From positions 124,001 to 188,000 of the IMG/VR virus record IMGVR_UViG_3300023174_000045: a stretch of DNA of 64,000 nucleotides; one strand, written 5' to 3'. Below the pieces are notes generated by a model. That model saw only the letters and a list, made by a program, of their open reading frames with translations, did not search any database and was not told the DNA's origin. Numbering within the stretch: position 1 is the first letter of the stretch; every line of letters begins with the position of its first letter. This document shows positions 36,467 through 53,186 of this stretch, piece by piece. The position numbers were made by a program, and so were the translations under genes.

Positions 36467-36495
36467 TTGACTATAAATAAAATTCCTGTTACAAT
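36467..36495 (+). promoter_or_regulatory. Promoter for first tRNA block
   Basis: TTGACT-17-TACAAT. Confidence 0.7.
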
Positions 36496-36578: not shown

Positions 36579-36581
36579 ACA

Positions 36582-36656: not shown

Positions 36657-36670
36657 GTAAATACAACAGT

Positions 36671-36753
36671 GCGGGTGTGGTGGAATTGGTAGACACACCT
36701 GGTTTAAGCCCAGACGCTAAGGCGTGAGAGTTCAAGTCTCTCCACCCGTACCA
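36671..36753 (+). tRNA. tRNA-Leu(TAA)
   Basis: Cloverleaf with variable arm, CCA. Confidence 0.9.
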
Positions 36754-36764
36754 AAGGAACAATC

Positions 36765-37238: not shown

Positions 37239-37242
37239 CAGC

Positions 37243-37860: not shown

Positions 37861-37871
37861 ACATGTTGAAA

Positions 37872-37900
37872 TTGACTGTAAACTTGTGTTTTGTTATAAT
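37872..37900 (+). promoter_or_regulatory. sigma70-type promoter
   Basis: TTGACT-17-TATAAT. Confidence 0.75.
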
Positions 37901-37992
37901 ACTAGCAGTGACGTTCACAAGCTATCAAAATCTAGCTGTAGACATCGGTCAAGCCTGGAGTTTGTGTAAATAACAGTCAACCGGAGACTGCT

Positions 37993-38148
37993 ATGAATTT
38001 GGTCAAATATCGAGATGCTGAGATGTGGACGTATACTTGGTTTTATGTGGGTGATACCGGACACATTGTGAGTCCGTATTTTGAAACAGAAAAACAAGCT
38101 CAGGAGTGGTTTGATCAAATTTTTGAAGGTGTTGAGGAGCAGTTATGA
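37993..38148 (+). CDS. 51-aa hypothetical protein
   Basis: SD GGAG, ATGA overlap with next gene. Confidence 0.6.
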   Translation: MNLVKYRDAEMWTYTWFYVGDTGHIVSPYFETEKQAQEWFDQIFEGVEEQL

Positions 38149-38537
38149 AAAAAGTGTTATTTGGTTTGTTATTGGTATCTGGTACAGTTCTGGCACAAGA
38201 TGTGTATGTGGTGGGCGCCCAGCCCAGGTATGTTACTGTGCAACAACAACAATGTCATGTAGTCAACGTGACTGAAAACAACAGCGGCGTTGGCACTGTG
38301 ATTGGTGCTGTGGCTGGTGGTGTAATCGGACATCAAGTGGGTCGTGGGTTTGGTCGCGATGTGGCCACTGTGTTGGGCACCGGCATTGGCGCTTCGGTGG
38401 GACAACGCATTGGACAAGATCAACAACAAACAGTGACCAAGCAAGTTTGTGACATGGTACCAGTTGTCATACAACAAGGTGAAACTGTGACATTTAATTA
38501 CAAGGGACGAGTGTTTACACAAGTTTTTGGTAATTAA
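38145..38537 (+). CDS. Secreted glycine-zipper 2TM protein (YcfJ-like)
   Basis: Signal peptide, GAVAGGVIGHQVGRG. Confidence 0.8.
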   Translation: MKKVLFGLLLVSGTVLAQDVYVVGAQPRYVTVQQQQCHVVNVTENNSGVGTVIGAVAGGVIGHQVGRGFGRDVATVLGTGIGASVGQRIGQDQQQTVTKQVCDMVPVVIQQGETVTFNYKGRVFTQVFGN

Positions 38538-38539
38538 AG

Positions 38540-38930
38540 TTATTGCTGTATGAAGCCGAGAGAAAAGTGTTCTGGACGGGGGTGCGAATCCCCCCAGGTC
38601 CACCATAAAGAAATTTGATGAAACCAAAAAAAGTAAAACAGTATTTTGTTATAGTAGACAAAGATGACACAGTAAAAAGAGTGTGTTGGGCACCTTTACT
38701 GTGGGATATTCCTAACCTGGGATATCGTTTTACAGGATTTGACGGTGGTATTCCAAAGTTTCTTTATGTCGGGCCTGCATAGTTTCGACAGGGCAACAAG
38801 TAACAGAGTGGACAGCACGGTAGGCGATGACCGTTAATCAAGCAAAAAACGTAAATGCAAACGACGAACAGTTCGCTTTGGCAGCCTAAACACTGCCTAG
38901 GGTAGGAAATACCTCGTAACAGAAACAACC
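38540..38930 (+). ncRNA. ssrA: Circularly permuted (two-piece) tmRNA, tag ANDEQFALAA
   Basis: T arm and CCA end at 38605 precede 5' GGGCCTG at 38771; G3:U70; tag 38857-38889; ends approximate. Confidence 0.92.
38618..38782 (+). CDS. Possible 54-aa ORF in tmRNA intervening segment
   Basis: Open ATG-TAG, no clear SD. Confidence 0.3.
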   Translation: MKPKKVKQYFVIVDKDDTVKRVCWAPLLWDIPNLGYRFTGFDGGIPKFLYVGPA

Positions 38931-38960
38931 CAAAAGGCCTTGACGGGCCTTTTGTCTTTG
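38931..38960 (+). terminator. Intrinsic terminator after tmRNA
   Basis: CAAAAGGCCT-TGAC-GGGCCTTTTG. Confidence 0.8.
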
Positions 38961-38988
38961 TGTATACTACACTATTGAGGAGAACAAC

Positions 38989-39180
38989 ATGAGCAAAGGC
39001 ACACGACCCCGTCCGTCAGTGGTCAGTCAACAAGAACTGGCTGCAAGGCACGAAGCCATATTTGGCCGGAAGCCACCACGAGAACGTTATGTTCCGCCAC
39101 CCTTGCCACCTGAACTGGCAGGACCCAGTTCTTTTGAACAGCAGTTGGGCACCACAAAACTTCCGCCCGGAAGAACATAA
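38989..39180 (+). CDS. Small Pro-rich hypothetical protein
   Basis: SD GAGGAG. Confidence 0.7.
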   Translation: MSKGTRPRPSVVSQQELAARHEAIFGRKPPRERYVPPPLPPELAGPSSFEQQLGTTKLPPGRT

Positions 39181-39205
39181 ATTGGCAAAAGACATTTAAA
39201 AATCG

Positions 39206-39234
39206 TTGACTTTCTTTCATTCATCATATATAAT
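39206..39234 (+). promoter_or_regulatory. Promoter of attenuator 1
   Basis: TTGACT-17-TATAAT; ATG 6 nt downstream. Confidence 0.8.
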
Positions 39235-39239
39235 ACACT

Positions 39240-39347
39240 ATGAACAAGCAAAACGCCCAACTGTCCTTTGAGATACCCTCACATGATTTACACGATTATG
39301 CACGTGAGGCGCTGGCCTATACTAACAGCGGGTGGAGCGGTACCTAA
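39240..39347 (+). CDS. Leaderless 35-aa leader peptide (attenuator 1)
   Basis: MNKQNAQLSFEIPSHDLHDYAREALAYTNSGWSGT. Confidence 0.65.
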   Translation: MNKQNAQLSFEIPSHDLHDYAREALAYTNSGWSGT

Positions 39348-39367
39348 TACAAAAGTACTACTCAAGC

Positions 39368-39400
39368 AAAAACCCGCCACCTAGGCGGGTTTTTCTTTTT
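39368..39400 (+). terminator. Attenuator 1 terminator
   Basis: AAAAACCCGCC-ACCTA-GGCGGGTTTTT plus T tract. Confidence 0.88.
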
Positions 39401-39404
39401 GTGC

Positions 39405-39548
39405 TAGACCAATAATGGGATAGGTGTTATACTAGAGACTAGTTAGGAAAGCAACACAGCAAAGTTTGCAAAGACCCTACAAAGCGAAGGGATTTTGCAA
39501 AACAAGTTGACCAGAATAGCACAAGGTGTTATACTAGAGACTAGTTAG
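39405..39548 (+). promoter_or_regulatory. Tandem promoters sharing a 25-nt repeat
   Basis: TAGACC/TTGACC-17-TATACT; AGGTGTTATACTAGAGACTAGTTAG at 39422 and 39524. Confidence 0.75.
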
Positions 39549-39731
39549 AAAGCAAGGCGGTCCTCGAATGTAAGAACCCACGCAGAAATGCAAAAAGGGT
39601 TGGAACCAAGGGACACGAAGCGAGTTTGTAGACTCGGCCTCCGCAGGTTAAAACAGCACAGTCGATCGAGACTAGTTGAAAGGTTCGTTAAAATTTTGAT
39701 TGTCATGTAGTCCCTGTCTAGTTACAGGGTA

Positions 39732-39963
39732 CTATATGTAAACACATTAGGGTTACCTAGCCGTTAGGGGTGAACGAAGGCCAGACAGCGCAAGCCGGAT
39801 ACCCATGAAGCAGGAGGGTTCTACAGTATGACGAGACACCATCGAGTCAAAGGGCAAGAACTATCAAACTCCAGGAAGGCGACGGAACAACTGGGCCCGT
39901 AATGAGGTCTTGACGCAAGTTGGTGATGCGTGTCAAGAACTTCCCTAATGTATTTTCATATAG
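39732..39963 (+). ncRNA. Helix-closed ncRNA A (~230 nt)
   Basis: CTATATG..CACATTAGGG pairs with CCCTAATGT..CATATAG; internal hairpins. Confidence 0.7.
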
Positions 39964-39966
39964 CAT

Positions 39967-40042
39967 GCACGGTTCGTCTATCGGTTTAGGACACTAGCCT
40001 TTCACGTTAGTAAGACGGGTTCGATTCCCGTACCGTGTACCA
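39967..40042 (+). tRNA. tRNA-Glu(TTC)
   Basis: Cloverleaf, CCA. Confidence 0.92.
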
Positions 40043-40045
40043 AGT

Positions 40046-40185
40046 TGTCGAGGAACTCCATCCTTAAACGGGGGGCAACACTGGGCCTACGAAGTGGGTG
40101 ATTGCAAAAACCAGAAAGAGCAACGTTGACATTGACGAAAAAATGTCTTACGATGAATAAACGTCCTAATAGGGGCTTGTCGACA
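40046..40185 (+). ncRNA. Candidate ncRNA B
   Basis: TGTCGA/TCGACA closing helix, imperfect extension. Confidence 0.45.
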
Positions 40186-40208
40186 CACAAGTAGCCTGTA
40201 CTAATTTT

Positions 40209-40294
40209 GGAGATGTGGCAGAGTGGTTGATTGCACCAGACTGTAAATCTGGCCCCTAAAAAGCGCGGTGGTTCGAATCCATCCGTCTCCACCA
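40209..40294 (+). tRNA. tRNA-Tyr(GTA)
   Basis: Cloverleaf with variable arm, CCA. Confidence 0.92.
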
Positions 40295-40303
40295 ATTTTG
40301 TTT

Positions 40304-40455
40304 TTATAGTCAAGCATCGATACAGGTATCGTGTAAGGACGCTTACGCTATTCGGGTCCAACCGGCCGGGAACGGATCCTAATATAACTGCTATCGGCTG
40401 TTGCACTCTTAGCGGAGGACGCATAAATTGAGCATCTCTCGGTGCTTGACTATAA
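40304..40455 (+). ncRNA. Helix-closed ncRNA C
   Basis: 17-bp closing helix, three internal hairpins. Confidence 0.7.
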
Positions 40456-40461
40456 GAATTT

Positions 40462-40537
40462 GGTCCTAAAGTGTTCATGGACGCACGACGGCTTGTCACG
40501 CCGTAAGAGTGGGGATCGTTACCCCCTAGGACCGCCA
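40462..40537 (+). tRNA. tRNA-Asp(GTC)
   Basis: Cloverleaf, atypical T loop ATCGTTA, CCA. Confidence 0.88.
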
Positions 40538-40543
40538 AGTTTT

Positions 40544-40622
40544 GCAGATAATGGATAGGGCGGGCATCTATTGGTGCCTAATACTAGTTGCCGCAGAGGT
40601 TCGAGTCCTCTGGTCTGCACCA
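40544..40622 (+). ncRNA. tRNA-like RNA 1 (acceptor and T arm, no canonical D/anticodon arms)
   Basis: GCAGAT/GTCTGC, A73-CCA, AGAGG-TTCGAGT-CCTCT. Confidence 0.65.
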
Positions 40623-40628
40623 AGTTTT

Positions 40629-40727
40629 TGCGTTATAGTATAGTGGCCAGTACGCAAGGGCCCACACAATGAAAATTGTATGGTGGGAATTGCCAGTGTA
40701 GCGATGGTTCGATTCCATCTAACGCAA
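40629..40727 (+). ncRNA. tRNA-like RNA 2 (anticodon arm replaced by GAAA-capped long hairpin)
   Basis: 7-bp acceptor, D arm with GG, T arm; no encoded CCA. Confidence 0.7.
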
Positions 40728-40734
40728 TATCATT

Positions 40735-40952
40735 TTTGAGAGTGTCAGCAAGCGCAGTCACGCTATCTAGGTAAGTTCGAACTACCGAAATAGTAAAAGG
40801 GGACGGGTTCAACTCCCGGGGGATCGGAAGATCCCTGCAGATTGGTTGCTAACTGGACAGGTACCCAAGTGATATCCATCGCGAGCGAGGTCAGGCTAGG
40901 CGGCCGGTAGGTCCTGAATAAATCTACGATAAAAGTGACGTAGGCTCTCAAA
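40735..40952 (+). ncRNA. YrlA-like RNA with circularly permuted tRNA domain
   Basis: T arm, then GGAA-closed acceptor helix, then D arm (40804-40854); 9-bp terminal helix. Confidence 0.65.
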
Positions 40953-40960
40953 TTCAATCG

Positions 40961-41037
40961 GCGACCATAGCTCATTTGGATAGAGCACTGTGCTACGAAC
41001 GCAGGGGTGGGAGGTTCGAATCCTTCTGGTCGCGCCA
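40961..41037 (+). tRNA. tRNA-Arg(ACG)
   Basis: Cloverleaf, CCA. Confidence 0.92.
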
Positions 41038-41132
41038 TGTAAAAACACTCTAAACTGGACGCAGGATCTGAGAAGGTTGAACGTAGGTTGATCACTACTA
41101 GTAAGCTGGAGATCAAGAGTGTTTCTACATGG
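41035..41132 (+). ncRNA. Inter-tRNA helix element
   Basis: CCATGTAAAAACACTCT / AGAGTGTTTCTACATGG. Confidence 0.7.
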
Positions 41133-41207
41133 TGCGTGTCGTCAAGCGGTCAAGACCTCGGATTGTGATTCCGATATGCGTGGGTTCGAATCCCATCATG
41201 CACCCCA
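41131..41207 (+). tRNA. tRNA-His(GTG)
   Basis: Encoded G-1:C73, CCA. Confidence 0.92.
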
Positions 41208-41230
41208 ACACAAGATAAATAAAAGAATAA

Positions 41231-41305
41231 CGCGGGGTAGAGAAGCAGTAACTCGTTAGGCTCATAACCTAAAGATCGGCGGTGCGAATCCGTCCTCCGC
41301 AACCA
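41231..41305 (+). tRNA. tRNA-fMet(CAT)
   Basis: C1:A72 mismatch; only two G-C pairs next to anticodon loop. Confidence 0.85.
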
Positions 41306-41321
41306 AATTTTAGGAGTTTTT

Positions 41322-41729
41322 ATGATAGCAATTAACACGGTAATAAAACCGATGGTGGGCCACGAACAAGAAGCAATTGACAATTTCTATACTTTTCATA
41401 AATCACCACACCCGGAGTTATTTGAATTTTTTAAAGAGTTTGTGGATCAAAATTTAATTTTGAATACGATGTTTTGGCAGCCATATGATGACCGAAATCT
41501 CAATCATTTGCTTAGATACTATGCTGTCAATATGGAAAATGCCGAAATTTTTCAAGAAAAATTATTGAGTGAGTCTGCAGATTTTTCAATGAAAAAATTC
41601 TGGGATCAAAATAAATTTGACTATTCAATTGAGTTGACAGAAATAAACTTTGATGAAGAATTTCCACAATACTATGTTGTAGATAATGAGTCTGGTGGAG
41701 TTTGGGGAGACGTTTGGCCATTGCTTTGA
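41322..41729 (+). CDS. Hypothetical protein, paralogue A
   Basis: SD AGGAG; FEFFKEFVDQNLILN. Confidence 0.75.
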   Translation: MIAINTVIKPMVGHEQEAIDNFYTFHKSPHPELFEFFKEFVDQNLILNTMFWQPYDDRNLNHLLRYYAVNMENAEIFQEKLLSESADFSMKKFWDQNKFDYSIELTEINFDEEFPQYYVVDNESGGVWGDVWPLL

Positions 41730-42208
41730 TATGCGTTGAAGTTTATTGCAGGCCAACAAAAAAATGTGATTTTGTTGCTGTTCGATCGTGGACAGAATTT
41801 ATATGTGCTGAGTATCCAGCGATGTTTGACTTCTTTCAAGAGTGCATTGATCAAAATTTAATTGTGAACAAATTTGCATTAAATGTAGATGGAGTTACAG
41901 ACTTATGGAAATACTACTCCTCCAATCAAACTCAAGCTGAAATTTTTCTTGAAAAATTTAAAAATATGCCTTTGAATTTTTCTAAAGAGAAGTTTTCAAT
42001 GAAAGAATTTTGGAATCGTTATGAGTTTGAAATTGATATGTCACTCAAAGAAATAGATTTTGACAACGAAAAAGAATTATTTGATTTGATAAACAAAGAC
42101 ACCGGTGAGATGTGGGCTACTACATTTCCATTAGGTGGACCGCTTGATAATTATTACCAGTTAGAAAAACATTTTCAGCCACAGTGGTTGACAACAAAAG
42201 ATAAATAA
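41726..42208 (+). CDS. Hypothetical protein, paralogue B (probable TTG start)
   Basis: FDFFQECIDQNLIVN aligns to A; start chosen by alignment. Confidence 0.65.
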   Translation: MICVEVYCRPTKKCDFVAVRSWTEFICAEYPAMFDFFQECIDQNLIVNKFALNVDGVTDLWKYYSSNQTQAEIFLEKFKNMPLNFSKEKFSMKEFWNRYEFEIDMSLKEIDFDNEKELFDLINKDTGEMWATTFPLGGPLDNYYQLEKHFQPQWLTTKDK

Positions 42209-42216
42209 ACTATAAT
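42188..42216 (+). promoter_or_regulatory. Promoter of attenuator 2
   Basis: TTGACA-17-TATAAT exact consensus. Confidence 0.85.
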
Positions 42217-42223
42217 AGGAACT

Positions 42224-42334
42224 ATGATGAAACAACAATTCTGTTCAATGTCCAAGCCCCAAACACTCCAGGCAACAACCTGGCTGTTGGCCAATGGCTC
42301 ATTCAACAGCATTCCAGGAGAACCGGGGTTCTGA
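42224..42334 (+). CDS. Leaderless 36-aa leader peptide (attenuator 2)
   Basis: MMKQQFCSMSKPQTLQATTWLLANGSFNSIPGEPGF. Confidence 0.7.
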   Translation: MMKQQFCSMSKPQTLQATTWLLANGSFNSIPGEPGF

Positions 42335-42361
42335 TTAGACTATATTCGTATACCTAACAAG

Positions 42362-42396
42362 AACCCCGGAACTAAACACTCCGGGGTTTTTCATTT
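42362..42396 (+). terminator. Attenuator 2 terminator
   Basis: AACCCCGGA/TCCGGGGTT 9 bp plus T tract. Confidence 0.85.
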
Positions 42397-42399
42397 AGT

Positions 42400-42578
42400 G
42401 CAACGGCAACGCGAGCCGGTATCACTCTAAACTACAAATGTGGGCGGCCCGGAGGATGGGAAGCTGGTGGTGAAAACGCCAGTGGTAAAATTCCGGAGTA
42501 TCGAAGCATTCTCGGGCCTTGGGGCAAGTGGGTTCATCCATGAAGAGTGCTTCGATACACACATTGGCAACAGTGTGT
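42400..42578 (+). ncRNA. Structured leader / candidate ncRNA D
   Basis: 15-bp helix 42498-42512/42544-42558 plus nested hairpins. Confidence 0.55.
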
Positions 42579-42588
42579 TGAAATTTAT

Positions 42589-42662
42589 TCCGGTGTAGTA
42601 TAATGGCAGTGCGGCGGTCTCCAAAACCGTTAGTGGGAGTTCGATTCTCTCCACCGGAGCCA
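42589..42662 (+). tRNA. tRNA-Trp(CCA)
   Basis: Cloverleaf, CCA. Confidence 0.92.
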
Positions 42663-42669
42663 AGTTAAT

Positions 42670-42744
42670 GGGGGGTTGGTGCTAACGGGAACACATGTGC
42701 TTTGCAAGCATGAGTTAAGGGTTCGATTCCCTTACCCTCCACCA
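42670..42744 (+). tRNA. tRNA-Ala(TGC)
   Basis: G3:U70, CCA. Confidence 0.9.
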
Positions 42745-42766
42745 TAGTCAGTATAAGTATTCACAA

Positions 42767-42856
42767 GGTGCGGTCCTATAATGGTATTAGAGCAGATTGC
42801 TAATCTGTCGCTCGGCGTAATCCGGGTTCTGAGTTCGAGTCTCAGTCGCACCGCCA
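42767..42856 (+). tRNA. tRNA-Ser(GCT)
   Basis: Long variable arm, G73, CCA. Confidence 0.9.
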
Positions 42857-42863
42857 AGAACAT

Positions 42864-42939
42864 TCCCTCGTAGCACAGCGGTAGTTGCGCTTCACTGTTA
42901 ATGAAGATGTCGTTCGTTCGATCCGAACCGAGGGAGCCA
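42864..42939 (+). tRNA. tRNA-Asn(GTT)
   Basis: Cloverleaf, CCA. Confidence 0.92.
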
Positions 42940-42957
42940 AATAAAAAAGGAAACGCA

Positions 42958-43140
42958 ATGTCAGCATTTAACACACACAACGACCCATTGAAACACAAGA
43001 CTGGTAAGCCCAGACTTGGTCCAATGAATGTAGAACAGTTGACCCGACTGTTGGAGAGTGCCAGACCCAAACATCGTGCAAAGATTCAACGTGCCTTGGA
43101 CTACAAGAAAACAATTCAAAAGATCATAGCAAAGGCTTGA
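42958..43140 (+). CDS. Basic 60-aa hypothetical protein
   Basis: SD AAGGA. Confidence 0.65.
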   Translation: MSAFNTHNDPLKHKTGKPRLGPMNVEQLTRLLESARPKHRAKIQRALDYKKTIQKIIAKA

Positions 43141-43145
43141 TATCC

Positions 43146-43219
43146 GCCCTACTAGTATAATGGCATTACACTGGTTTTGTAATCCTGTGATGGCAGTTCG
43201 ATTCTGTCGTGGGGCACCA
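43146..43219 (+). tRNA. tRNA-Thr(TGT)
   Basis: Cloverleaf; two U:U mismatches in anticodon stem. Confidence 0.82.
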
Positions 43220-43271
43220 AATTTTTACAAAGGAGATCTGTCATGAGTAGTGACAAGAGTGACAAACCTAT

Positions 43272-43346
43272 GGGGGTATAACTTAACGGCTAAAGTAGTG
43301 GGCTTTTAACCCATTAATCAGAGTTCGATTCTCTGTGCCCCTACCA
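43272..43346 (+). tRNA. tRNA-Lys(TTT)
   Basis: Cloverleaf, CCA. Confidence 0.9.
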
Positions 43347-43420
43347 TATAAAAACACATTAACAGCGTCGTACCGGTCGCCGGACTTAGGTTGAATTCCT
43401 AATAGTGTGTTTCTATATGG
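43344..43420 (+). ncRNA. Inter-tRNA helix element
   Basis: CCATATAAAAACACATT / AGTGTGTTTCTATATGG. Confidence 0.7.
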
Positions 43421-43494
43421 TAATATAGCATAGTGGCTAATGCAGTTGCTTCATACGCAACCCACCGTTGGTTCGAGTCCAACTATTACCACCA
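43419..43494 (+). tRNA. tRNA-Met(CAT), elongator-like
   Basis: Cloverleaf, CCA. Confidence 0.85.
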
Positions 43495-43500
43495 AGTTTT

Positions 43501-43575
43501 GGCCAGTTAGCTCAGGGGTAGAGCAACGTCTTGATAAGGCGTGGGTCGGTGGTTCGAGACCACCACTGGCTACCA
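43501..43575 (+). tRNA. tRNA-Ile(GAT)
   Basis: Cloverleaf, CCA. Confidence 0.92.
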
Positions 43576-43582
43576 ATTCAGT

Positions 43583-43658
43583 TGGGGTGTCGCCTAGAGG
43601 CCTAAGGCACTGGTCTTTGAAATCAGTATCATGAGTTCGAATCTCATCTCCCCTGCCA
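43583..43658 (+). tRNA. tRNA-Gln(TTG)
   Basis: Unpaired 1:72, G73, CCA. Confidence 0.85.
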
Positions 43659-43665
43659 AACAACG

Positions 43666-43694
43666 TAGACAAACTTTGATGTTTGTTGTATAAT
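43666..43694 (+). promoter_or_regulatory. Internal promoter
   Basis: TAGACA-17-TATAAT. Confidence 0.7.
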
Positions 43695-43702
43695 TACACA
43701 AT

Positions 43703-43777
43703 GCGGGATTAACTCAGGGGTAGAGTGTCAGCCTTCCAAGCTGTTCGTCAGCGGTTCGAATCCGCTATCCCGCTCCA
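43703..43777 (+). tRNA. tRNA-Gly(TCC)
   Basis: U73, CCA. Confidence 0.92.
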
Positions 43778-43797
43778 CTTTAACAGAAAGAAACAAC

Positions 43798-44004
43798 ATG
43801 ACAATTGAGAGTGCCGCAACCTTTTTGGTATGTGTAATTTTATTGAGCTGTGGTATCATAGTGCTGGCCGGTCTAGTATTATTGATCAACAACCTGTTGC
43901 ATCGCTACTGGAAAGATCTAAACTGGACTCTACCTGAGAGCATGCAGTCCGTACGTTATGTTGAAGTTGACAAAACTCAAGAACCCCATTTAGACCGCAA
44001 GTAA
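43798..44004 (+). CDS. Small membrane protein
   Basis: N-terminal hydrophobic helix. Confidence 0.6.
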   Translation: MTIESAATFLVCVILLSCGIIVLAGLVLLINNLLHRYWKDLNWTLPESMQSVRYVEVDKTQEPHLDRK

Positions 44005-44048
44005 TACCGACCCCTTGACGGTTTAGGTCCCTTGTACTTGCGGTCTAA
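43990..44048 (+). other. 14-bp inverted repeat before tRNA-Pro
   Basis: TTAGACCGCAAGTA / TACTTGCGGTCTAA. Confidence 0.7.
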
Positions 44049-44055
44049 TTTTTTA

Positions 44056-44129
44056 CTCCGATTGGTGAAATGGTATCATTCATGGTTTGGGACCATGTGG
44101 CGCAAGTTCGATTCTTGCATCGGAGACCA
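44056..44129 (+). tRNA. tRNA-Pro(TGG)
   Basis: Cloverleaf, CCA. Confidence 0.9.
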
Positions 44130-44135
44130 TGTAAT

Positions 44136-44213
44136 GCAACGGTGGCAGAGCGGCCCAATGCACGGGATTGCAAATCCCGAAAACCACTGGTTCAAATCCA
44201 GTCCGTTGCTCCA
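44136..44213 (+). tRNA. tRNA-Cys(GCA)
   Basis: U73, CCA. Confidence 0.92.
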
Positions 44214-44227
44214 ACAAGAAAGTACCT

Positions 44228-44473
44228 ATGTGGGAATATGTTTTAACGTTTTTTGCTGTGTTGTTCACAGATATTTTTTATACCTACTACCTAAAAGCAG
44301 TACAAGATGAACGTGTGATGGCTGCCAGTGTTTGGGCCACTGTTGTATTTTTGGTAGCCTGCGTAGCAGTGATCAACTACACAACAAATTACTGGTTGCT
44401 GATTCCTGCAGGGCTAGGTGCGTTTTGTGGCACTTGGATAGGCATGAGATTACGGGCTCAACAAAAGCAGTAG
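44228..44473 (+). CDS. Small multi-TM protein (DUF2179-like)
   Basis: Three hydrophobic helices, GAFCGTWIG. Confidence 0.6.
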   Translation: MWEYVLTFFAVLFTDIFYTYYLKAVQDERVMAASVWATVVFLVACVAVINYTTNYWLLIPAGLGAFCGTWIGMRLRAQQKQ

Positions 44474-44493
44474 TGATCGTCTATAAATATAGC

Positions 44494-44889
44494 ATGTCCA
44501 TTTACAATCAGTATTTTTGCCAACATTGTCGTTCTGCGTATTCTAGATCACAAGAAAAATTAACTCCAGGATATTGCAGTTTGAATTGTTCTGTGGTTGA
44601 GTCAAAAAGACAGTCGCAAAAAACTTTCAAAGAACTAACTTTGGAAGACAGAATCAAAAATCGACCTGGTGGCACATATCTTGAGTACAACAGTGGTATT
44701 CCTCCTGAACTGGCTGTAGAAACAACCCCAGTCAAAAGAAGAGAGTACAAATGTGTTTGTTGCGGCATTGCTGATTACAATGGCCGTCCGTTGAAACTAC
44801 AACTGTTTCACCATGACGGTAATCAAAAGAATTTTGACCCAGACAATGTTAAATTTTTGTGTCCAAATTGTTTGAGCCAACATCAATAA
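44494..44889 (+). CDS. HNH-family protein, possibly degenerate
   Basis: CVCC, LQLFHHDGN..N..FLCPNCL; TATAAATA upstream. Confidence 0.7.
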   Translation: MSIYNQYFCQHCRSAYSRSQEKLTPGYCSLNCSVVESKRQSQKTFKELTLEDRIKNRPGGTYLEYNSGIPPELAVETTPVKRREYKCVCCGIADYNGRPLKLQLFHHDGNQKNFDPDNVKFLCPNCLSQHQ

Positions 44890-44895
44890 ATCAAA

Positions 44896-44985
44896 GGAAG
44901 TGTGGCAGAGTCCGGCTGATTGCACCTGTCTTGAAAACAGACGGCTCGAAAGGGTCCGTGAGTTCGAATCTCACCGCTTCCACCA
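44896..44985 (+). tRNA. tRNA-Ser(TGA)
   Basis: Long variable arm; A73 rather than G73. Confidence 0.88.
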
Positions 44986-44991
44986 AAAATC

Positions 44992-45066
44992 GCCTTGTTA
45001 ACTCAGCGGTAGAGTAGCGCCTTTACACGGCGAATGTCGGCGGTTCGATCCCGTCACAAGGTACCA
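44992..45066 (+). tRNA. tRNA-Val(TAC)
   Basis: Cloverleaf, CCA. Confidence 0.92.
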
Positions 45067-45072
45067 ACCAAT

Positions 45073-45148
45073 GGCTCGATAGCTCAGTTGGTAGAGCAGT
45101 AGACTGAAAATCTATGTGTGGGCGGTTCGATCCCGTCTCGAGCCACCA
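45073..45148 (+). tRNA. tRNA-Phe(GAA)
   Basis: Cloverleaf, CCA. Confidence 0.93.
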
Positions 45149-45345
45149 AATGTATTATCCAACACAAACTCATGTTGTTGTGGTTCAAATATGGGATCGT
45201 CTGCATATTGAGGCACAGTGTGTTGGTAAAGAGGATTCACTGTGAATTCTTTGGTTGTGGTCCATGATCGGTTGGGCCTGTAGGGTTCATGGCTAAATGC
45301 GGCATACAGCACCTGCACAGTGTCTCGTAGTTCATATGGAATCAT
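45112..45345 (-). CDS. Possible antisense ORF overlapping tRNA-Phe 3' end
   Basis: 77 aa, TAAATA just upstream on minus strand. Confidence 0.35.
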   Translation of the reverse strand: MIPYELRDTVQVLYAAFSHEPYRPNRSWTTTKEFTVNPLYQHTVPQYADDPIFEPQQHEFVLDNTFGGSRRDRTAHT

Positions 45346-45357
45346 ATTGTATTTAAT

Positions 45358-45434
45358 GCCCCGGTGATGGAATTGGTATACATGCCGGTCTTAGAAGCCG
45401 TATTTTAGGAGTTCGAGTCTCCTCTGGGGCACCA
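45358..45434 (+). tRNA. tRNA-Leu(TAG), short variable loop
   Basis: 77 nt, A73, CCA. Confidence 0.85.
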
Positions 45435-45439
45435 ATTCA

Positions 45440-45514
45440 GGATGTTTAGCACAGCGGTAGTGCATCACCTCGACACGGTGAGGGTCAGTGGTTCAATTCC
45501 ACTAACATCCACCA
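45440..45514 (+). tRNA. tRNA-Val(GAC)
   Basis: Cloverleaf, CCA. Confidence 0.9.
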
Positions 45515-45521
45515 CAAATCT

Positions 45522-45600
45522 GCCCCCATGGACAAATCGGTAAAGTCGTCTCTCTCAAAAGGAGAAGTTGTTCTCTGTTCGAATCAGAGTGGGGGTACCA
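45522..45600 (+). tRNA. tRNA-Leu(CAA), short variable loop
   Basis: 79 nt, A73, CCA. Confidence 0.85.
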
Positions 45601-45608
45601 TTCCTAAT

Positions 45609-45685
45609 GCCCTGGTGGCGCAATTGGTAGACGCACCACTTTGAGGGGGTGTACAGTGTGAGTTCGAGTCTCACCCAGGGCACCA
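45609..45685 (+). tRNA. tRNA-Leu(GAG), short variable loop
   Basis: 77 nt, A73, CCA. Confidence 0.82.
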
Positions 45686-45686
45686 A

Positions 45687-45715
45687 TTGACAACAAATTC
45701 AAAATCAATTACAAT
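45687..45715 (+). promoter_or_regulatory. Internal promoter
   Basis: TTGACA-17-TACAAT. Confidence 0.75.
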
Positions 45716-45723
45716 ACACACAC

Positions 45724-45797
45724 GGGCTGTTAGTTAAATGGGATAACTCTGCCATGGCATGGCAGCATCGGGAGTTCGACTCTCCCACGGTCCACCA
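45724..45797 (+). tRNA. tRNA-Ala(GGC)
   Basis: G3:U70 and A32-U38 as in bacterial Ala(GGC). Confidence 0.92.
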
Positions 45798-45818
45798 CTA
45801 TCAAGAAAGGAGTCAGTG

Positions 45819-46253
45819 ATGAGTGAATTTAACGTATTGGTTGGCAAGCGCATCAATGGCTTGTTCATAGGCGAAGATGCTTGGGCCTTGGTGTTTCGCG
45901 ACATCAATGAACGTTACTATTGTTTTCGCACAGAGAACGATTGTTGCAACGCTGTGTGGTTCAATCACGTAAACGGTGTAGAAACTGTGCTGGGCGAAGG
46001 CAACTTGTTCGATGTCCTGCGTGGTGCCATGGTAACTGCTGTGGAAGACAAAGGCTGGACTGATGATCGCGACGACGAAGATGGCTACGAAGTTGTGCAA
46101 GATGGTTTCTGGACCATAAAAACAGACCGTGGCTACATAGACTTAGAAGTACGCAACAGTCACAACGGCTACTATGGTGGCCGTGTGCGGTATGATGAAG
46201 AGTCCAAGCCTGGTGACATCAAAGATTTACAAGCAGTGACTGAAGATTTTTAA
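45819..46253 (+). CDS. Hypothetical protein
   Basis: SD AAGGAG; RNSHNGYYGG. Confidence 0.75.
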   Translation: MSEFNVLVGKRINGLFIGEDAWALVFRDINERYYCFRTENDCCNAVWFNHVNGVETVLGEGNLFDVLRGAMVTAVEDKGWTDDRDDEDGYEVVQDGFWTIKTDRGYIDLEVRNSHNGYYGGRVRYDEESKPGDIKDLQAVTEDF

Positions 46254-46330
46254 CGGAATATGGCGCAGCCTGGCAGCGCACTTGCATGGGGTGCAAGGGG
46301 TCGCAAGTTCGAATCTTGCTATTCCGACCA
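46254..46330 (+). tRNA. tRNA-Pro(GGG)
   Basis: Cloverleaf, CCA. Confidence 0.92.
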
Positions 46331-46355
46331 ACTATAAATAACCTTGAAAGTGTAT

Positions 46356-46826
46356 ATGAAAAAACTTGATATAGAACAAGTGGCCGAATTTATCCGGACT
46401 CAAAGTCCAGAAACACGCATCTATCTTGGATGCGACAGTGAACGCATCAAAATTGATGGTGCATGGTGGGCTGACTATGTGTTGGCCATTGTGGTTCACA
46501 TCAACGGCAACAACGGTTGCAAACTGTTTGGTGAAGTACATCGTGAACGTGTGTGGGATCAAAAAGCATCCAAGCCGGCCATGCGGCTCATGACTGAAGT
46601 TTACAAAGTTTCAGAACTGTACTTGAAACTGGCAGAAGTGTTGGAAGGGCGCGATGTTGAAGTTCACTTGGACATCAACCCTGACGAAATGCACGGATCA
46701 AGTTGTGTTGTCAGCCAAGCCATCGGTTACATCAAAGGCACATGTAATGTGATTCCTTTTGTGAAGCCTGAGGCTTTTGCAGCCAGCTATGCTGCCGACA
46801 GATTCAAAGGCTTGCGGGCGGCGTAG
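46356..46826 (+). CDS. RNase H-like YkuK/DUF458 family protein
   Basis: IYLGCDS, RLMTEV, EVHLDIN, KPEAFAASYAAD. Confidence 0.8.
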   Translation: MKKLDIEQVAEFIRTQSPETRIYLGCDSERIKIDGAWWADYVLAIVVHINGNNGCKLFGEVHRERVWDQKASKPAMRLMTEVYKVSELYLKLAEVLEGRDVEVHLDINPDEMHGSSCVVSQAIGYIKGTCNVIPFVKPEAFAASYAADRFKGLRAA

Positions 46827-46832
46827 AATATT

Positions 46833-46908
46833 GCGGACGTAGCTCAGTTGGTAGAGCATTACCTTGCCAAGGTAAATGTCGTCGGTTCGAACCCGATCGT
46901 CCGCTCCA
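46833..46908 (+). tRNA. tRNA-Gly(GCC)
   Basis: U73, CCA. Confidence 0.93.
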
Positions 46909-46922
46909 ACTAAAAAGTTTGT

Positions 46923-47576
46923 ATGATCAATCTACCAAAAGAATTTATCTCTGGGCACAGGTATCTTTTTGTGCATGGGCAAAGAAGCAGTGATGCTGAA
47001 TTTGAGGTATGTATTAATGGCAAAACAATCGACAACCCATTTGCAAGCGTTGAACAATTTGATTTAGATCACCCTGATCTTGGTCCAACGCAGTACGCAT
47101 TCAGCACTGAAACTTCTTTTTTGGGAGCCAGGACCATCTGCATCAAAATGCTTAAAGGGTCATTGACTTTGACAAGAGCTAGGGTAAGTTATCCTGCCAA
47201 GATAACCAACAGCGAAGGTATTGACTCATTTGGTTACTATTCATTGTTTCAGCCCATTGGTGATCCAAAGTGGCTTGTTAAGATAAATGGTCAGTTACAA
47301 ACGCTGGAACCACAAGATCAACATTTAACTGGCGAAGTCCACCACAGCATAACTGCTGGAGATGTCCTAGAATACTATCATGTCATGATTGAAGGTCCGA
47401 GCCACTGGTGTATTGCCTATTCACAATCTATACACAATGGAATAATTGATCAACAAGATCCCAACATTGAATCTATATTGCCTATTGATAATCAATCTGG
47501 AGTTGATTATCAATCCAGTAACAATCGATTGAACATTTTAAAAAATCAGCTTTTGGCTGATTACAAAAATAGCTGA
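46923..47576 (+). CDS. Hypothetical protein
   Basis: 217 aa; stop lies inside tRNA-Thr 5' end. Confidence 0.65.
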   Translation: MINLPKEFISGHRYLFVHGQRSSDAEFEVCINGKTIDNPFASVEQFDLDHPDLGPTQYAFSTETSFLGARTICIKMLKGSLTLTRARVSYPAKITNSEGIDSFGYYSLFQPIGDPKWLVKINGQLQTLEPQDQHLTGEVHHSITAGDVLEYYHVMIEGPSHWCIAYSQSIHNGIIDQQDPNIESILPIDNQSGVDYQSSNNRLNILKNQLLADYKNS

Positions 47577-47646
47577 TGTGGCACAGTGGTAGCGCACTCC
47601 CTTGGTAAGGGAGAGGTCGCGGGTTCAATCCCCGCCATCAGCACCA
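47572..47646 (+). tRNA. tRNA-Thr(GGT)
   Basis: Cloverleaf, CCA. Confidence 0.93.
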
Positions 47647-47651
47647 GACAA

Positions 47652-47726
47652 CGGCCTTTGGTGAAATGGATATCATGCTTGTCTTCGAAACAAGCGGTGG
47701 CGGTTCGATCCCGTCAGGGCTGGCCA
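47652..47726 (+). tRNA. tRNA-Arg(TCG)
   Basis: Cloverleaf, CCA. Confidence 0.9.
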
Positions 47727-51900: not shown

Positions 51901-51955
51901 AAAAGGGTCCAATGGGCCCTTTTTCATTGACACACAATGGATTCTTTGTTATACT
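51901..51955 (+). terminator. Terminator followed by promoter
   Basis: AAAAGGGTCC/GGGCCCTTTT; TTGACA-17-TATACT at 51927. Confidence 0.75.
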
Positions 51956-51980: not shown

Positions 51981-52163
51981 ATGACTGAACAAACTGAACC
52001 TAAAAAATTTACCGATACGTTGAAAGACGCATTAGCCAAAAAACACGCGGCTGCTCATCCTGATGCCAAAACCAAAACAGGCAAAAGTGGCAAAACCAAA
52101 AAATCTGGCACTCCTGTGGTAGCAGGGAGACCTGTGCAACGAGCAGTGGGACGTGGTGGATGA
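51981..52163 (+). CDS. Small basic protein
   Basis: Lys-rich, 60 aa. Confidence 0.65.
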   Translation: MTEQTEPKKFTDTLKDALAKKHAAAHPDAKTKTGKSGKTKKSGTPVVAGRPVQRAVGRGG

Positions 52164-52456
52164 GCAACGAATTAGCCCGATTTGTCAACAGCCGACGGCG
52201 ACACAAAACTGATGTGGCTGTGGCCAGGCAAGTCAAGATTGCTCGAGCACACAATAGTACTTCAGATGTTAAGCAACCACATCGACTTGCAAAACGTCAT
52301 GCCATGGACTGTGGTAACCCGCAATGTTACTTGTGTGGCAACCCACGCAAGACACACAAAGACAAACTGACACAACAAGAAAAACGCTTGTTCCAAGACT
52401 TGGAACAACAAACAGATCGACATTCAAACGGATTATCAACCAAGGAAGAACCATGA
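52160..52456 (+). CDS. Basic protein with CGNPQCYLC
   Basis: ATGA overlaps. Confidence 0.7.
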   Translation: MSNELARFVNSRRRHKTDVAVARQVKIARAHNSTSDVKQPHRLAKRHAMDCGNPQCYLCGNPRKTHKDKLTQQEKRLFQDLEQQTDRHSNGLSTKEEP

Positions 52457-52719
52457 AGCACCCAGCAGACAGAACAGCCGGCCTCAACTCAGAACTAGCA
52501 GTGGAGATGATTGGCAACAGATACAATTTGATCCTAGCTGGCGCCCGCCGCATGAGAGAACTCAGTCGTGGTGACTTGCCTAAAATCACACTTAAATTTC
52601 CACACAGTGCAGGCGTCACAGCCATGCTGGAAATTGAAGCTGGCAAGATTGGCAAGGATTATATCTATCGTGAAACAGAAGTTCAACCACGACGCCGCAA
52701 CAAGCAACAACCCTTGTAA
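52453..52719 (+). CDS. RNA polymerase omega subunit-like protein
   Basis: IGNRYNLILAGARRMREL..G and AMLEIEAGKI match omega core. Confidence 0.75.
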   Translation: MKHPADRTAGLNSELAVEMIGNRYNLILAGARRMRELSRGDLPKITLKFPHSAGVTAMLEIEAGKIGKDYIYRETEVQPRRRNKQQPL

Positions 52720-52721: not shown

Positions 52722-53186
52722 GTGGATGAAAAGAACAGCGCCCGGGGACGTGACAGTTTTGATTCGGAAACTGGCAACACCTTGGTGCATTTTTTTAACC
52801 GCAATGTCATGCCATATCCCACTGAAGCTGGTGGGCACAAATTTGACCTTGTACCGGTTCAAAATCAAAAAGACCTCATGGTCAATGCGGCACGTATGCA
52901 TGCTCAACAAGAGTATGATCGCATTATGGAACTGGTGGCAGTGTTGCAACGCCAAGCTGAGGACATACAACACCGTTTGAACATAACCGATCAGGTTCGT
53001 GAGGCAAAATACGAATTCCAAACTTACCATGGACAGATCTACTGGTTGGTTGAAGACCATCGACACAACTGCAAACGGCTAGTTCACACTGGACCTGCAG
53101 ACTGGAACACTGGCCGACCTGAGGGATACGAATACATTTGCCAGGTGCAATGGCTAGGCGACTACACATGGAAAAAAGTAGAGTAA
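52722..53186 (+). CDS. DUF2452-like protein (GTG start)
   Basis: PYPT..G..KFDLVPV, AKYEFQ..HGQIY. Confidence 0.65.
   Translation: MDEKNSARGRDSFDSETGNTLVHFFNRNVMPYPTEAGGHKFDLVPVQNQKDLMVNAARMHAQQEYDRIMELVAVLQRQAEDIQHRLNITDQVREAKYEFQTYHGQIYWLVEDHRHNCKRLVHTGPADWNTGRPEGYEYICQVQWLGDYTWKKVE

What the first reader, a model, noticed from the sequence alone, without database searches (positions are those of the whole stretch)
52453..52719. Phage RNA polymerase omega-like subunit lacking the ppGpp-site N-terminus
Seen: omega core motifs, but the N-terminus is MKHPADRT rather than MARVT. Established: the omega N-terminus forms ppGpp site 1 in proteobacterial RNAP, and stable-RNA promoters are ppGpp-repressed. 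Inference: swapping omega could keep the tRNA operons on during the stringent response triggered by tRNA loss, complementing the attenuators.
Basis: partly seen in the sequence, partly recalled or inferred. Interest (0 to 1): 0.65.

Follow-up and report, generated by a model that had tools for sequence, protein, structure and literature searches.

The report
Phage omega subunit without MAR motif
A huge freshwater phage carries its own copy of the smallest subunit (omega) of bacterial RNA polymerase, in a version whose N-terminus has lost the arginine that helps bind the starvation alarmone ppGpp, so the phage may fit the host enzyme with a subunit that hears that alarm less well.

Summary
ORF 52453-52719 (+, 88 aa) is a true omega (RpoZ/Rpb6) homologue: it passes the Pfam and TIGRFAM cut-offs, its family profile hits E. 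coli omega at E 2e-15, and its model overlays solved omega chains. A complex model seats it on E. coli beta' at the canonical site (0.72; best control 0.00). The start is well supported. Residues A9-G10-L11 align with A2-R3-V4, so Arg3 is Gly and eight extra residues precede it.

The gene is not a one-off. IMG/VR holds hundreds of viral omega genes, many on 200-524 kb contigs that show no beta, beta' or sigma70. The window belongs to a supported clade (SH-aLRT 96) with Gly at the Arg3 position in 52 of 54 unique sequences. A second viral group keeps M-A-R and lies inside tRNA arrays.

Loss of the ppGpp site 1 contacts is plausible. However, the phage promoters, including the one before the first tRNA genes, look insensitive to ppGpp at initiation. 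Site 2 with DksA would be untouched. The tRNA-embedded viral omegas keep MAR. I rate an omega swap that blunts site 1, mainly its pausing effect, as the best but unproven reading. No paper on phage-encoded omega was found.

The parts
52453..52719 (+). Phage omega (RpoZ-like) gene, 88 aa plus stop
   Evidence: Pfam PF01192 at 29.9 bits and TIGR00690 at 29.5 bits, both over cut-off. PDB profile hit to E. coli omega at E 2e-15. AF2 model with pLDDT 83.8; the top 50 Foldseek hits are all omega chains. Complex model with beta' scores 0.72 against a best control of 0.00.
52453..52476 (+). Codons for the N-terminal extension M1-T8 (MKHPADRT), which has no counterpart in cellular omega
   Evidence: Alignments. 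Extensions of 5-18 aa occur throughout the viral clade, with an acidic residue in the last five positions in 48 of 52 sequences.
52477..52494 (+). Codons for A9-G10-L11-N12-S13-E14, the segment that aligns with E. coli omega residues 2-7; Gly10 replaces Arg3
   Evidence: alignments. Gly at this position in 52 of 54 unique clade members. Residues 8 and 10-14 are modelled against beta' 364, 417-419, 613-615 and 618-619.
52442..52449 (+). Shine-Dalgarno-like AAGGAAGA before the omega start
   Evidence: Read directly from the sequence.
52160..52456 (+). Gene B, 98 aa, basic, with a CGxPxCxxCGNPRK motif; its stop overlaps the omega start (ATGA)
   Evidence: phrog_4499, function unknown. Conserved directly upstream of omega in all six related IMG/VR loci. 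Only viral look-alikes were found.
51981..52163 (+). Gene A, 60 aa, Lys-rich, ending in GRGG; its stop overlaps the start of gene B
   Evidence: Conserved in all six related loci, and the start was fixed from the alignment. No family match.
51927..51955 (+). Sigma70-type promoter TTGACA-17-TGTTATACT of the A-B-omega operon
   Evidence: 11 of 12 consensus matches plus an extended -10. Conserved in L002, L003 and L007.
51901..51924 (+). GC-rich hairpin followed by T5 just before the promoter; it probably ends the upstream AhpC/AhpD unit
   Evidence: Read from the sequence and conserved in L002 and L003. The terminator scan did not flag it.
52722..53186 (+). DUF2452 gene starting 2 nt after the omega stop, probably in the same transcript
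   Evidence: PF10504 at 27.3 bits. Found in the same place in L003 and L004.
36504..47726 (+). tRNA and tmRNA island (34 tRNAs, one permuted beta-type tmRNA) 4.7 kb upstream of omega
   Evidence: Viral omega genes are linked to such islands in general.

Best explanation
The gene encodes a phage-made omega subunit. It is transcribed by host sigma70 RNA polymerase from its own consensus promoter, together with two small basic proteins. It most likely binds the host beta' subunit at the normal omega site, on newly assembled or omega-free enzyme or by exchange.

In this viral clade the segment that lies against the beta' pocket forming ppGpp site 1 has been rebuilt. Arg3 is Gly, the free N-terminal Ala2 is buried behind a 5-18 residue extension that usually carries an acidic residue, and the new motif T-[A/L]-G-L-[T/S]-[S/N]-[E/Q] is conserved. 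The inferred result is a host polymerase whose site 1 binds ppGpp poorly or not at all. That would relieve the DksA-independent effects of the alarmone, chiefly the site 1-dependent strengthening of pauses and slowing of elongation, on the phage's very large transcription load.

Shown here: omega homology, fold, a clade-wide altered N-terminus, and the absence of any phage beta or beta'. Modelled only: binding to beta' with the N-terminal segment at site 1. Inferred only: loss of ppGpp binding and its benefit to the phage.
For: Omega identity.

Seating on beta': the model scores ipSAE 0.72 against a best control of 0.00. That mark was reached by 51 of 78 solved complexes and 2 of 108 mismatched pairs. 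The three runs share at least 90% of their contacts, and the partner's pLDDT is at least 69. Omega residues 8 and 10-14 touch beta' 364, 417-419, 613-615 and 618-619, which include the site 1 residues R417, K615 and I619 (residue list from PMC7676912).

Altered N-terminus: Arg3 is Gly in 52 of 54 unique clade members, and T, [A/L] and L at the neighbouring positions are nearly fixed. The clade is one group in the tree, SH-aLRT 96.

Dependence on host polymerase: no beta, beta', sigma70 or T7-type RNAP in the record. None either in 12 related omega-bearing records, 9 of them at least 90% complete. There are 27 sigma70-consensus promoters on the coding strand.

Likely host lineage: it has M-A-R omega and a beta' pocket of preserved charge (R362K, R417, K615R, D622).

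Role of site 1: it mediates the direct ppGpp effect on pausing (PMC13192712).

One clade member (L059) has a SpoT-type HD_4 hydrolase gene 2.4 kb downstream on the same strand.
Against: No experiment and no ligand model addresses ppGpp binding. The complex model resembles solved E. coli structures, so it may pass from memory; it used E. coli beta', not the host's, which is unknown.

In E. coli, loss of omega or of site 1 gives only a modest phenotype, because site 2 with DksA suffices.

The phage promoters look insensitive to ppGpp at initiation anyway.

A large sister group of viral omegas keeps M-A-R. Carrying omega therefore has some benefit unrelated to losing the motif.

The conserved new N-terminal motif could serve packing against beta', or another partner, rather than exclusion of ppGpp.

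No RelA/SpoT, MazG or DksA gene accompanies omega in this record. No RNA data exist for it.
Confidence: 0.4

Rival explanations
1. Plain omega supply. The phage makes omega only to keep host RNA polymerase assembled, stable and processive during a long, transcription-heavy infection, when host gene expression may be shut off. The odd N-terminus has no regulatory meaning.
For: The best-established role of omega is folding and latching of beta' (abstracts of PMC5811629 and PMC7700224) and stabilising the transcribing enzyme (PMC13192885). A large group of viral omegas keeps the canonical M-A-R N-terminus, so carrying omega does not require losing the motif. The conserved core and the modelled interface are canonical.
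Against: The changed N-terminus is not degenerate. A new motif is held almost invariant across a clade that has diverged to about 45-50% identity. That points to selection on this segment, which lies at site 1 in the model.
Confidence: 0.3
2. Adaptor or handle. The clade-specific N-terminal extension and the conserved basic C-terminal tail (DYLYKE..EPRRR) recruit a phage factor or nucleic acid to polymerases that carry the phage subunit. The co-transcribed small basic proteins A and B are candidate partners. This would mark or redirect those enzymes.
For: Genes A and B are translationally coupled to omega and conserved with it in all six related loci, down to 60% omega identity. The C-terminal tail is conserved in the clade, yet only residue 71 of it is placed in the complex model. 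There is a natural precedent for regulation through omega: GafA activates RcGTA genes by binding omega (PMC9638019).
Against: No function or fold is known for A or B. Homologues of B occur in Pseudomonas jumbo phages in which no omega was found. No interaction was tested here.
Confidence: 0.17
3. Omega serves a phage-encoded multisubunit RNA polymerase that lies in the missing 35% of the genome or is too diverged for Pfam to detect.
For: The record is estimated at only 65% complete. Some jumbo phages have very diverged beta/beta'-like subunits (my knowledge).
Against: No beta or beta' match in this record. None in 12 omega-bearing relatives, including 9 records at least 90% complete and two with terminal repeats. 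There are many sigma70-consensus promoters. The core of omega fits proteobacterial beta'.
Confidence: 0.04
4. Cellular DNA mis-binned as viral, or a decaying passenger gene.
For: Omega is otherwise a cellular gene, and IMG/VR contains some cellular contamination.
Against: The gene sits inside a 225-kb virus record among phage-type genes. It has its own conserved promoter and conserved viral neighbours. Hundreds of relatives lie on viral contigs. A pattern scan of 185,579 species genomes found no close relative. The frame is intact and the core residues are invariant.
Confidence: 0.02

Closest known systems
Proteobacterial RNA polymerase omega subunit (RpoZ; E. coli, Vibrio, Burkholderiales)
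   Same: Same family and fold. It has the same conserved core (IGNR[F/Y]xLVL, RRxRxL, EIExG) and the same modelled seat on beta' regions 474-488 and 905-912 and the C-terminal 1360-1364. It is 44% identical over 63 residues to a Burkholderiales omega.
   Different: It is encoded by a phage. It is not next to gmk or spoT. It has eight extra N-terminal residues, Gly instead of Arg3, and a conserved basic C-terminal tail.
E. coli omega mutants lacking residues 2-5, and RNAP 'site 1 minus' variants
   Same: The residues that coordinate the ppGpp phosphates are missing or replaced. These laboratory variants abolish ppGpp binding at site 1 and its effect on pausing.
   Different: Those are engineered deletions. 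Here a natural, conserved replacement motif and an extension occupy the place, and ppGpp binding has not been measured.
M-A-R-type viral omega genes of huge freshwater phages
   Same: Phage-encoded omega of similar length and core, in the same habitat and on contigs of 200-524 kb. They group with the window's clade rather than with canonical beta or gamma omegas in the tree, though support is weak at 81-86.
   Different: They keep M-A-R-I-T-S-E or x-R-A-R-Y-T-S-E. They lie inside tRNA arrays: 51 of 60 are within 1 kb of a tRNA. The window's clade lies beside such arrays at most.
Other phage measures against the stringent response: the T7 portal protein Gp8 inhibiting RelA/SpoT, and HD alarmone phosphodiesterases of jumbo phages
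   Same: They would serve the same end, escaping alarmone-imposed limits on phage growth (PMC13483052; PMC7824862).
   Different: Those act on synthesis or breakdown of the alarmone. This would act at its receptor on the polymerase, by replacing a subunit.
Phage proteins that bind and reprogram host RNAP (T7 Gp2, Xp10 P7, P23-45 gp39)
   Same: Small phage proteins that act on host RNA polymerase (titles and abstracts).
   Different: Those are unrelated folds that bind as extra factors. This one is a homologue of a genuine subunit and would take that subunit's place.

Membership tests
RNA polymerase omega / Rpb6 (PF01192, TIGR00690 rpoZ) | Sequence match above the curated family cut-offs | tested here: met
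   PF01192 at 29.9 bits against 26; TIGR00690 at 29.5 bits against 23.6. Family profile against PDB omegas reaches E 5.5e-17.
RNA polymerase omega / Rpb6 (PF01192, TIGR00690 rpoZ) | Helical omega fold | tested here: met
   AF2 model with pLDDT 83.8. The top 50 Foldseek PDB hits are all omega chains, with rmsd 1.2-1.6 A over about 60 residues in the best rows. E-values are only 2e-3 or weaker because the protein is so small.
RNA polymerase omega / Rpb6 (PF01192, TIGR00690 rpoZ) | Binds beta' at the conserved-region and C-terminal-tail site | tested here: inconclusive
   The model supports binding but does not show it. Score 0.72, best control 0.00; the mark was reached by 51 of 78 solved complexes and 2 of 108 mismatched pairs; runs agree in at least 90% of contacts; partner pLDDT at least 69. 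It may pass from memory of solved E. coli complexes, and E. coli beta' was used.
RNA polymerase omega / Rpb6 (PF01192, TIGR00690 rpoZ) | Co-purifies with, and is part of, core RNA polymerase | not testable with these tools
   Needs a pull-down or reconstitution.
Proteobacterial ppGpp-responsive omega (M-A-R type) | N-terminal Met-Ala-Arg, with residues 2-5 at ppGpp site 1 | tested here: not met
   The N-terminus is MKHPADRT-A-G-L, and Gly10 aligns with Arg3. Gly occupies that position in 52 of 54 clade members.
Proteobacterial ppGpp-responsive omega (M-A-R type) | Chromosomal gmk-rpoZ-spoT neighbourhood | tested here: not met
   The neighbours are phage genes A and B, DUF2452, AhpC/AhpD and a tRNA island. 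One relative has an HD_4 gene nearby.
Proteobacterial ppGpp-responsive omega (M-A-R type) | Partner beta' carries the site 1 pocket (R362, R417, K615, I619, D622) | tested here: inconclusive
   The host is unknown. In one Burkholderiales genome the pocket reads K, R, R, V, D, so its charge is kept.
Anti-stringent phage factor (functional class) | Lowers the ppGpp response of the infected cell | not testable with these tools

The most novel reading that the evidence does not exclude
A clade of huge freshwater phages replaces a subunit of the host's own RNA polymerase with a phage-made omega. Its rebuilt, often acidic N-terminus closes or disables ppGpp site 1. This would be a virus rewiring alarmone control by subunit substitution rather than by an add-on inhibitor or by alarmone degradation. 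The wider family of phage omegas embedded in tRNA arrays would then point to an undescribed phage module for controlling stable-RNA and bulk transcription.
Probability: 0.3. Interest if true: 0.8.

Novelty: new variant of a known kind. Interest (0 to 1): 0.62.

Why it matters
Omega is the least understood subunit of bacterial RNA polymerase, and the physiological weight of ppGpp site 1 is still debated. A natural, conserved omega variant without the MAR motif is a ready-made probe for what site 1 does, for example in pausing and elongation during stress. It is carried by viruses that depend wholly on host polymerase.

If it works as proposed, it would add a new class of phage take-over: substituting a host enzyme subunit. 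It would also add a new phage answer to stringent-response-based restriction.

Independently of mechanism, hundreds of phage-encoded omega genes, many inside tRNA arrays of 200-524 kb phages, do not appear in the literature I could search.

Tried and rejected
Searches that gave nothing:
- Megablast of the region and tblastn of omega against 50,697 deposited phage genomes found no match. No isolated phage with this gene was found at that sensitivity.
- A pattern scan of 185,579 species genomes with the clade alignment confirmed no relative.

Host identification:
- The phage tmRNA is of the betaproteobacterial permuted type. Blast against 301 sampled genomes of the order of one Burkholderiales genome gave only short, weak matches.
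- AhpC is 65-69% identical to many Burkholderiales. Its best hits (83% and 77%) are short MAG contigs from unrelated phyla that may themselves be viral.
- The host is therefore inferred only as a probable freshwater betaproteobacterium.

Expression: 20 public runs hold the stretch or part of it (lake, river and freshwater metagenomes, 10 studies), but none is RNA.

Neighbouring gene: gene B has only viral look-alikes without function.

Anti-stringent genes: RelA/SpoT, HD_4, MazG and DksA/TraR were not found in the record.

Tools and papers: complex prediction was unreachable six times before it ran (collected). Ross et al. 2013 could not be read. Four literature searches and one review look-up found no description of phage-encoded omega.

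Rejected ideas:
- The 128- and 131-aa forms of the protein, which start inside gene B.
- The minus-strand ORF 52269-52655, which has no family match and merely shadows the omega frame.
- A phage-encoded multisubunit RNAP as the partner.

The costly exhaustive protein search was used once (collected), because the claim of a virus-specific clade rests on the absence of cellular relatives.

Full report
**What is there**

The window is bases 124001-188000 of a 225,080-bp IMG/VR virus record that CheckV estimates at 65% complete. The ORF at 52453-52719 (+) encodes 88 residues.

It is an omega homologue by every test available:
- Pfam PF01192 (RNA_pol_Rpb6) at 29.9 bits, cut-off 26.
- TIGR00690 rpoZ at 29.5 bits, cut-off 23.6.
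- A profile of 23 family members matches solved omega chains of Vibrio cholerae (E 5.5e-17) and E. coli (E 2.3e-15).
- An AlphaFold2 model built on 78 sequences has mean pLDDT 83.8. Its 50 best Foldseek matches in the PDB are all omega chains, with rmsd 1.2-1.6 A over about 60 residues in the best rows. The E-values are weak (2e-3 at best) because the protein is so small.

**Start codon and N-terminus**

- An AAGGAAGA motif lies at 52442-52449.
- The ATG overlaps the TGA of the preceding gene (ATGA).
- In relatives such as L017/L018 and L067, stop codons directly upstream of the equivalent Met rule out a longer frame.
- The 128- and 131-residue versions in some JGI annotations begin at an ATG inside the preceding gene and are probably wrong.

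HMMER and BLASTP against the omega of a Burkholderiales genome (44% identity over 63 residues) both align phage A9-G10-L11 with cellular A2-R3-V/I4. The protein therefore carries eight extra residues (MKHPADRT) ahead of the position of the cellular Ala2, and Gly in place of Arg3.

**Surroundings**

Omega is the third gene of a tightly packed unit.
- Gene A (51981-52163, 60 aa) is Lys-rich and ends in GRGG.
- Gene B (52160-52456, 98 aa) belongs to phrog_4499, of unknown function, and has a CGxPxCxxCGNPRK motif.
- A, B and omega overlap by ATGA at both junctions.
- A DUF2452 gene starts two bases after the omega stop.
- A-B-omega is conserved in all six related IMG/VR loci, down to 60% omega identity.

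Upstream lie a GC-rich hairpin with a T-run and a sigma70-type promoter, TTGACA-17-TGTTATACT (51927-51955). Both are conserved in relatives.

The whole record holds 27 exact promoters of the form TTGACN, 14-16 bases, TGNTANNNT on the coding strand. Many are copies of TTGACCAATAATTGCCAAAATGCTATAAT.

No beta, beta', sigma70 region 2, T7-type polymerase, DksA/TraR, MazG, RelA/SpoT or HD_4 domain was found in the record. The phage therefore appears to rely on host sigma70 holoenzyme, and omega is its only polymerase-related gene in the 225 kb held.

A tRNA island lies 4.7 kb upstream, at 36504-47726. It holds 34 tRNAs and a permuted tmRNA.

The tmRNA type (RF01850, 133.8 bits) and an AhpC 65-69% identical to many Burkholderiales suggest a betaproteobacterial host. 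The DNA recurs in lake, river and freshwater metagenomes of 10 studies. The genus could not be fixed.

**Relatives**

The word search found 115 protein clusters at 47-98% identity, on contigs of up to 360 kb.

The exhaustive profile search found 2,946 representatives at E 1e-3 or better, and 168 at 1e-10 or better. Canonical betaproteobacterial omegas (MARITVEDCLEKIPNRF...) and gammaproteobacterial omegas (MARVTVQDAVEKIGNRF...) score only about 60-70 bits. They rank below many short omega-like proteins.

A second alignment found 274 more. Many lie on contigs of 200-524 kb.

I searched twelve such records, nine of them at least 90% complete and two with terminal repeats. Each has one omega (the 524-kb record has two), and none has a beta, beta' or sigma70 region 2 match.

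A pattern scan of one genome from each of 185,579 prokaryote species found no confirmed relative of the window's clade.

**Two N-terminal types among viral omegas**

In the loci most like the window, 52 of 54 unique sequences have Gly at the Arg3 position. The neighbouring positions read T, then A or L, then G, L, T/S, S/N, E/Q. Extensions of 5-18 residues precede this motif. An acidic residue falls within the last five positions of the extension in 48 of 52 sequences. A conserved C-terminal tail, DYLYKE..EPRRR, follows the core.

The second group keeps M-A-R-I-T-S-E (28 unique sequences) or x-R-A-R-Y-T-S-E.

In a maximum-likelihood tree of the core, the window's clade (53 rows plus the window) is one group with SH-aLRT 96. 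It lies beside the unresolved M-A-R viral sequences. Canonical beta and gamma cellular omegas fall on the other side of a weakly supported branch (81-86). Caveats: the alignment has only 79 columns, the trait columns were not removed, and the root is for drawing only. Read with those caveats, the Gly-type N-terminus looks like a single derived change that has since been kept.

**Link to tRNA islands**

Of 115 unique viral omega loci, 75 have a tRNA gene within the fetched 3-4 kb flanks.
- M-A-R group: 57 of 60 have one, 51 of 60 within 1 kb, always on the same strand. These omegas are often wedged between tRNA genes.
- The window's clade: 18 of 55 have one, none within 1 kb.
- For comparison, only 8.5% of the window's own record lies within 4 kb of a tRNA.

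Phage omega genes thus belong to the tRNA/tmRNA quarter of these genomes. The association is strongest for the omegas that keep M-A-R.

**Does it bind the polymerase, and where does the N-terminus go?**

I folded the protein with E. coli beta' residues 340-942 and 1131-1407, leaving out the SI3 insertion.
- The model supports binding but does not show it.
- The score is 0.72, against 0.00 for the best of three controls.
- That mark was reached by 51 of 78 solved complexes and by 2 of 108 mismatched pairs.
- The three runs share at least 90% of their contacts, and the partner's pLDDT is at least 69.
- The counts hold only roughly, because this was a three-chain job. A pass may also reflect memory of solved E. 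coli complexes.

The interface is the canonical one: beta' 474-488, 905-912 and 1360-1364 against omega 22-38 and 51-58. In addition, omega residues 8 and 10-14 touch beta' 364, 417-419, 613-615 and 618-619. Those beta' residues include R417, K615 and I619, which form ppGpp site 1 together with omega residues 2-5 (PMC7676912). Residues 1-7 of the extension are not placed with confidence.

In one Burkholderiales genome the omega is MARITVEDCLEKIPNRF.... The beta' pocket there reads R362K, R417, K615R, I619V, D622 and Y626Q. A site 1 in the likely host lineage is therefore plausible but not shown.

In its favour:
- The residues that hold the ppGpp phosphates on the omega side are replaced in a conserved way.
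- The phage depends on host polymerase.
- Site 1 is the route by which ppGpp directly strengthens pausing. The effect vanishes in site 1-minus RNAP (PMC13192712).
- Phages are known to be restricted by the stringent response and to counter it (PMC13483052; PMC7824862).
- One clade member has a SpoT-type HD_4 hydrolase gene 2.4 kb downstream of omega on the same strand, after a phosphatase-like and a kinase-like gene. This recalls the bacterial rpoZ-spoT pairing, though it is one case in twelve.

Against it:
- In E. coli, omega is dispensable for stringent control of stable RNA in vivo. Loss of site 1 gives only a modest lag, because site 2 with DksA remains.
- The phage promoters, including the one at 36467-36495 directly before the first tRNA genes, combine a consensus -35, a 17-bp spacer, an extended -10 and AT-rich discriminators (mean 2.8 G or C in 7; none above 4). 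In E. coli such promoters form stable open complexes and are not inhibited by ppGpp/DksA (my knowledge of the discriminator rule).
- The tRNA-embedded viral omegas keep M-A-R.
- No RNA data exist.

I therefore keep the idea of a site 1-blind omega. I move its likely benefit from keeping tRNA promoters on to relieving ppGpp-enhanced pausing and slowing of elongation on all phage transcription. I rate it at about 0.4.

The main rival is plain omega supply for assembly and stability of host polymerase (0.3). Next is an adaptor role for the extension and the basic tail, possibly with proteins A and B (0.17). A precedent for that is GafA acting through omega (PMC9638019).

**Novelty**

Automated pipelines already label these proteins as omega. 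However, four full-text searches and a look-up in the main jumbo-phage genomics review found no description of phage-encoded omega.

The gene is a member of a known family. A viral clade with a rebuilt N-terminus is a new variant of it.

**Limits**

- All functional statements are inference.
- The complex used E. coli beta'.
- The host is unknown.
- IMG/VR may contain some non-viral contigs.
- The tree has few columns.

Noticed in passing
window 33799-33827, 53772-53800, 54664-54692, 54971-54999, 55213-55241, 58450-58478, and about 15 more places in the record: A near-identical 29-bp promoter, TTGACCAATAATTGCCAAAATGCTATAAT, recurs on the coding strand. It has a consensus -35, a conserved spacer and an extended -10. 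It looks like a phage-specific class of strong sigma70 promoters whose spacer may bind a regulator.
   Followed up: partly
IMG/VR loci L182-L261 (for example L207, L210, L186, L226): A second group of viral omega genes keeps the M-A-R N-terminus and lies inside tRNA arrays. 51 of 60 unique loci have a tRNA within 1 kb on the same strand.
   Followed up: partly
L059:3986-7124 (343-kb viral record): Omega is followed on the same strand by a phosphatase-like gene (DSPc/Tc-R-P), a kinase-like gene (AAA_33) and an HD_4 gene (SpoT-type alarmone hydrolase fold). This recalls the bacterial gmk-rpoZ-spoT arrangement.
   Followed up: partly
window 51981-52163 and 52160-52456: Two small basic proteins of unknown function are translationally coupled to omega and conserved with it. 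Gene B has weak homologues in Pseudomonas jumbo phages.
   Followed up: partly
window 40544-40622: ARAGORN calls a tRNA with anticodon CTA (labelled Pyl) inside the tRNA island. It may be an amber suppressor.
   Followed up: no
window 38510-38980; L238:4539-4960: A permuted, betaproteobacterial-type tmRNA with tag ANDEQFALAA (RF01850, 133.8 bits). A related phage with an M-A-R omega carries one with tag ANDSQFALAA 1.3 kb from its omega.
   Followed up: partly
window 50808-51898: An AhpC/AhpD (peroxiredoxin plus CMD-family) pair lies just upstream of the omega operon. AhpC is 65-69% identical to many Burkholderiales. Its best hits (83% and 77%) are short contigs in MAGs named Haliscomenobacter and Fischerella, which may be mis-binned phage DNA.
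   Followed up: partly
G313:C1:115376-115594 (524-kb viral record): This record has two omega copies. One match contains an in-frame TAA, which may mean a broken copy, a sequencing error or another genetic code.
   Followed up: no
window 52324-52452: Some public gene calls extend omega to 128 or 131 aa from an upstream ATG that lies inside gene B in another frame. The start is probably mis-called.
   Followed up: yes
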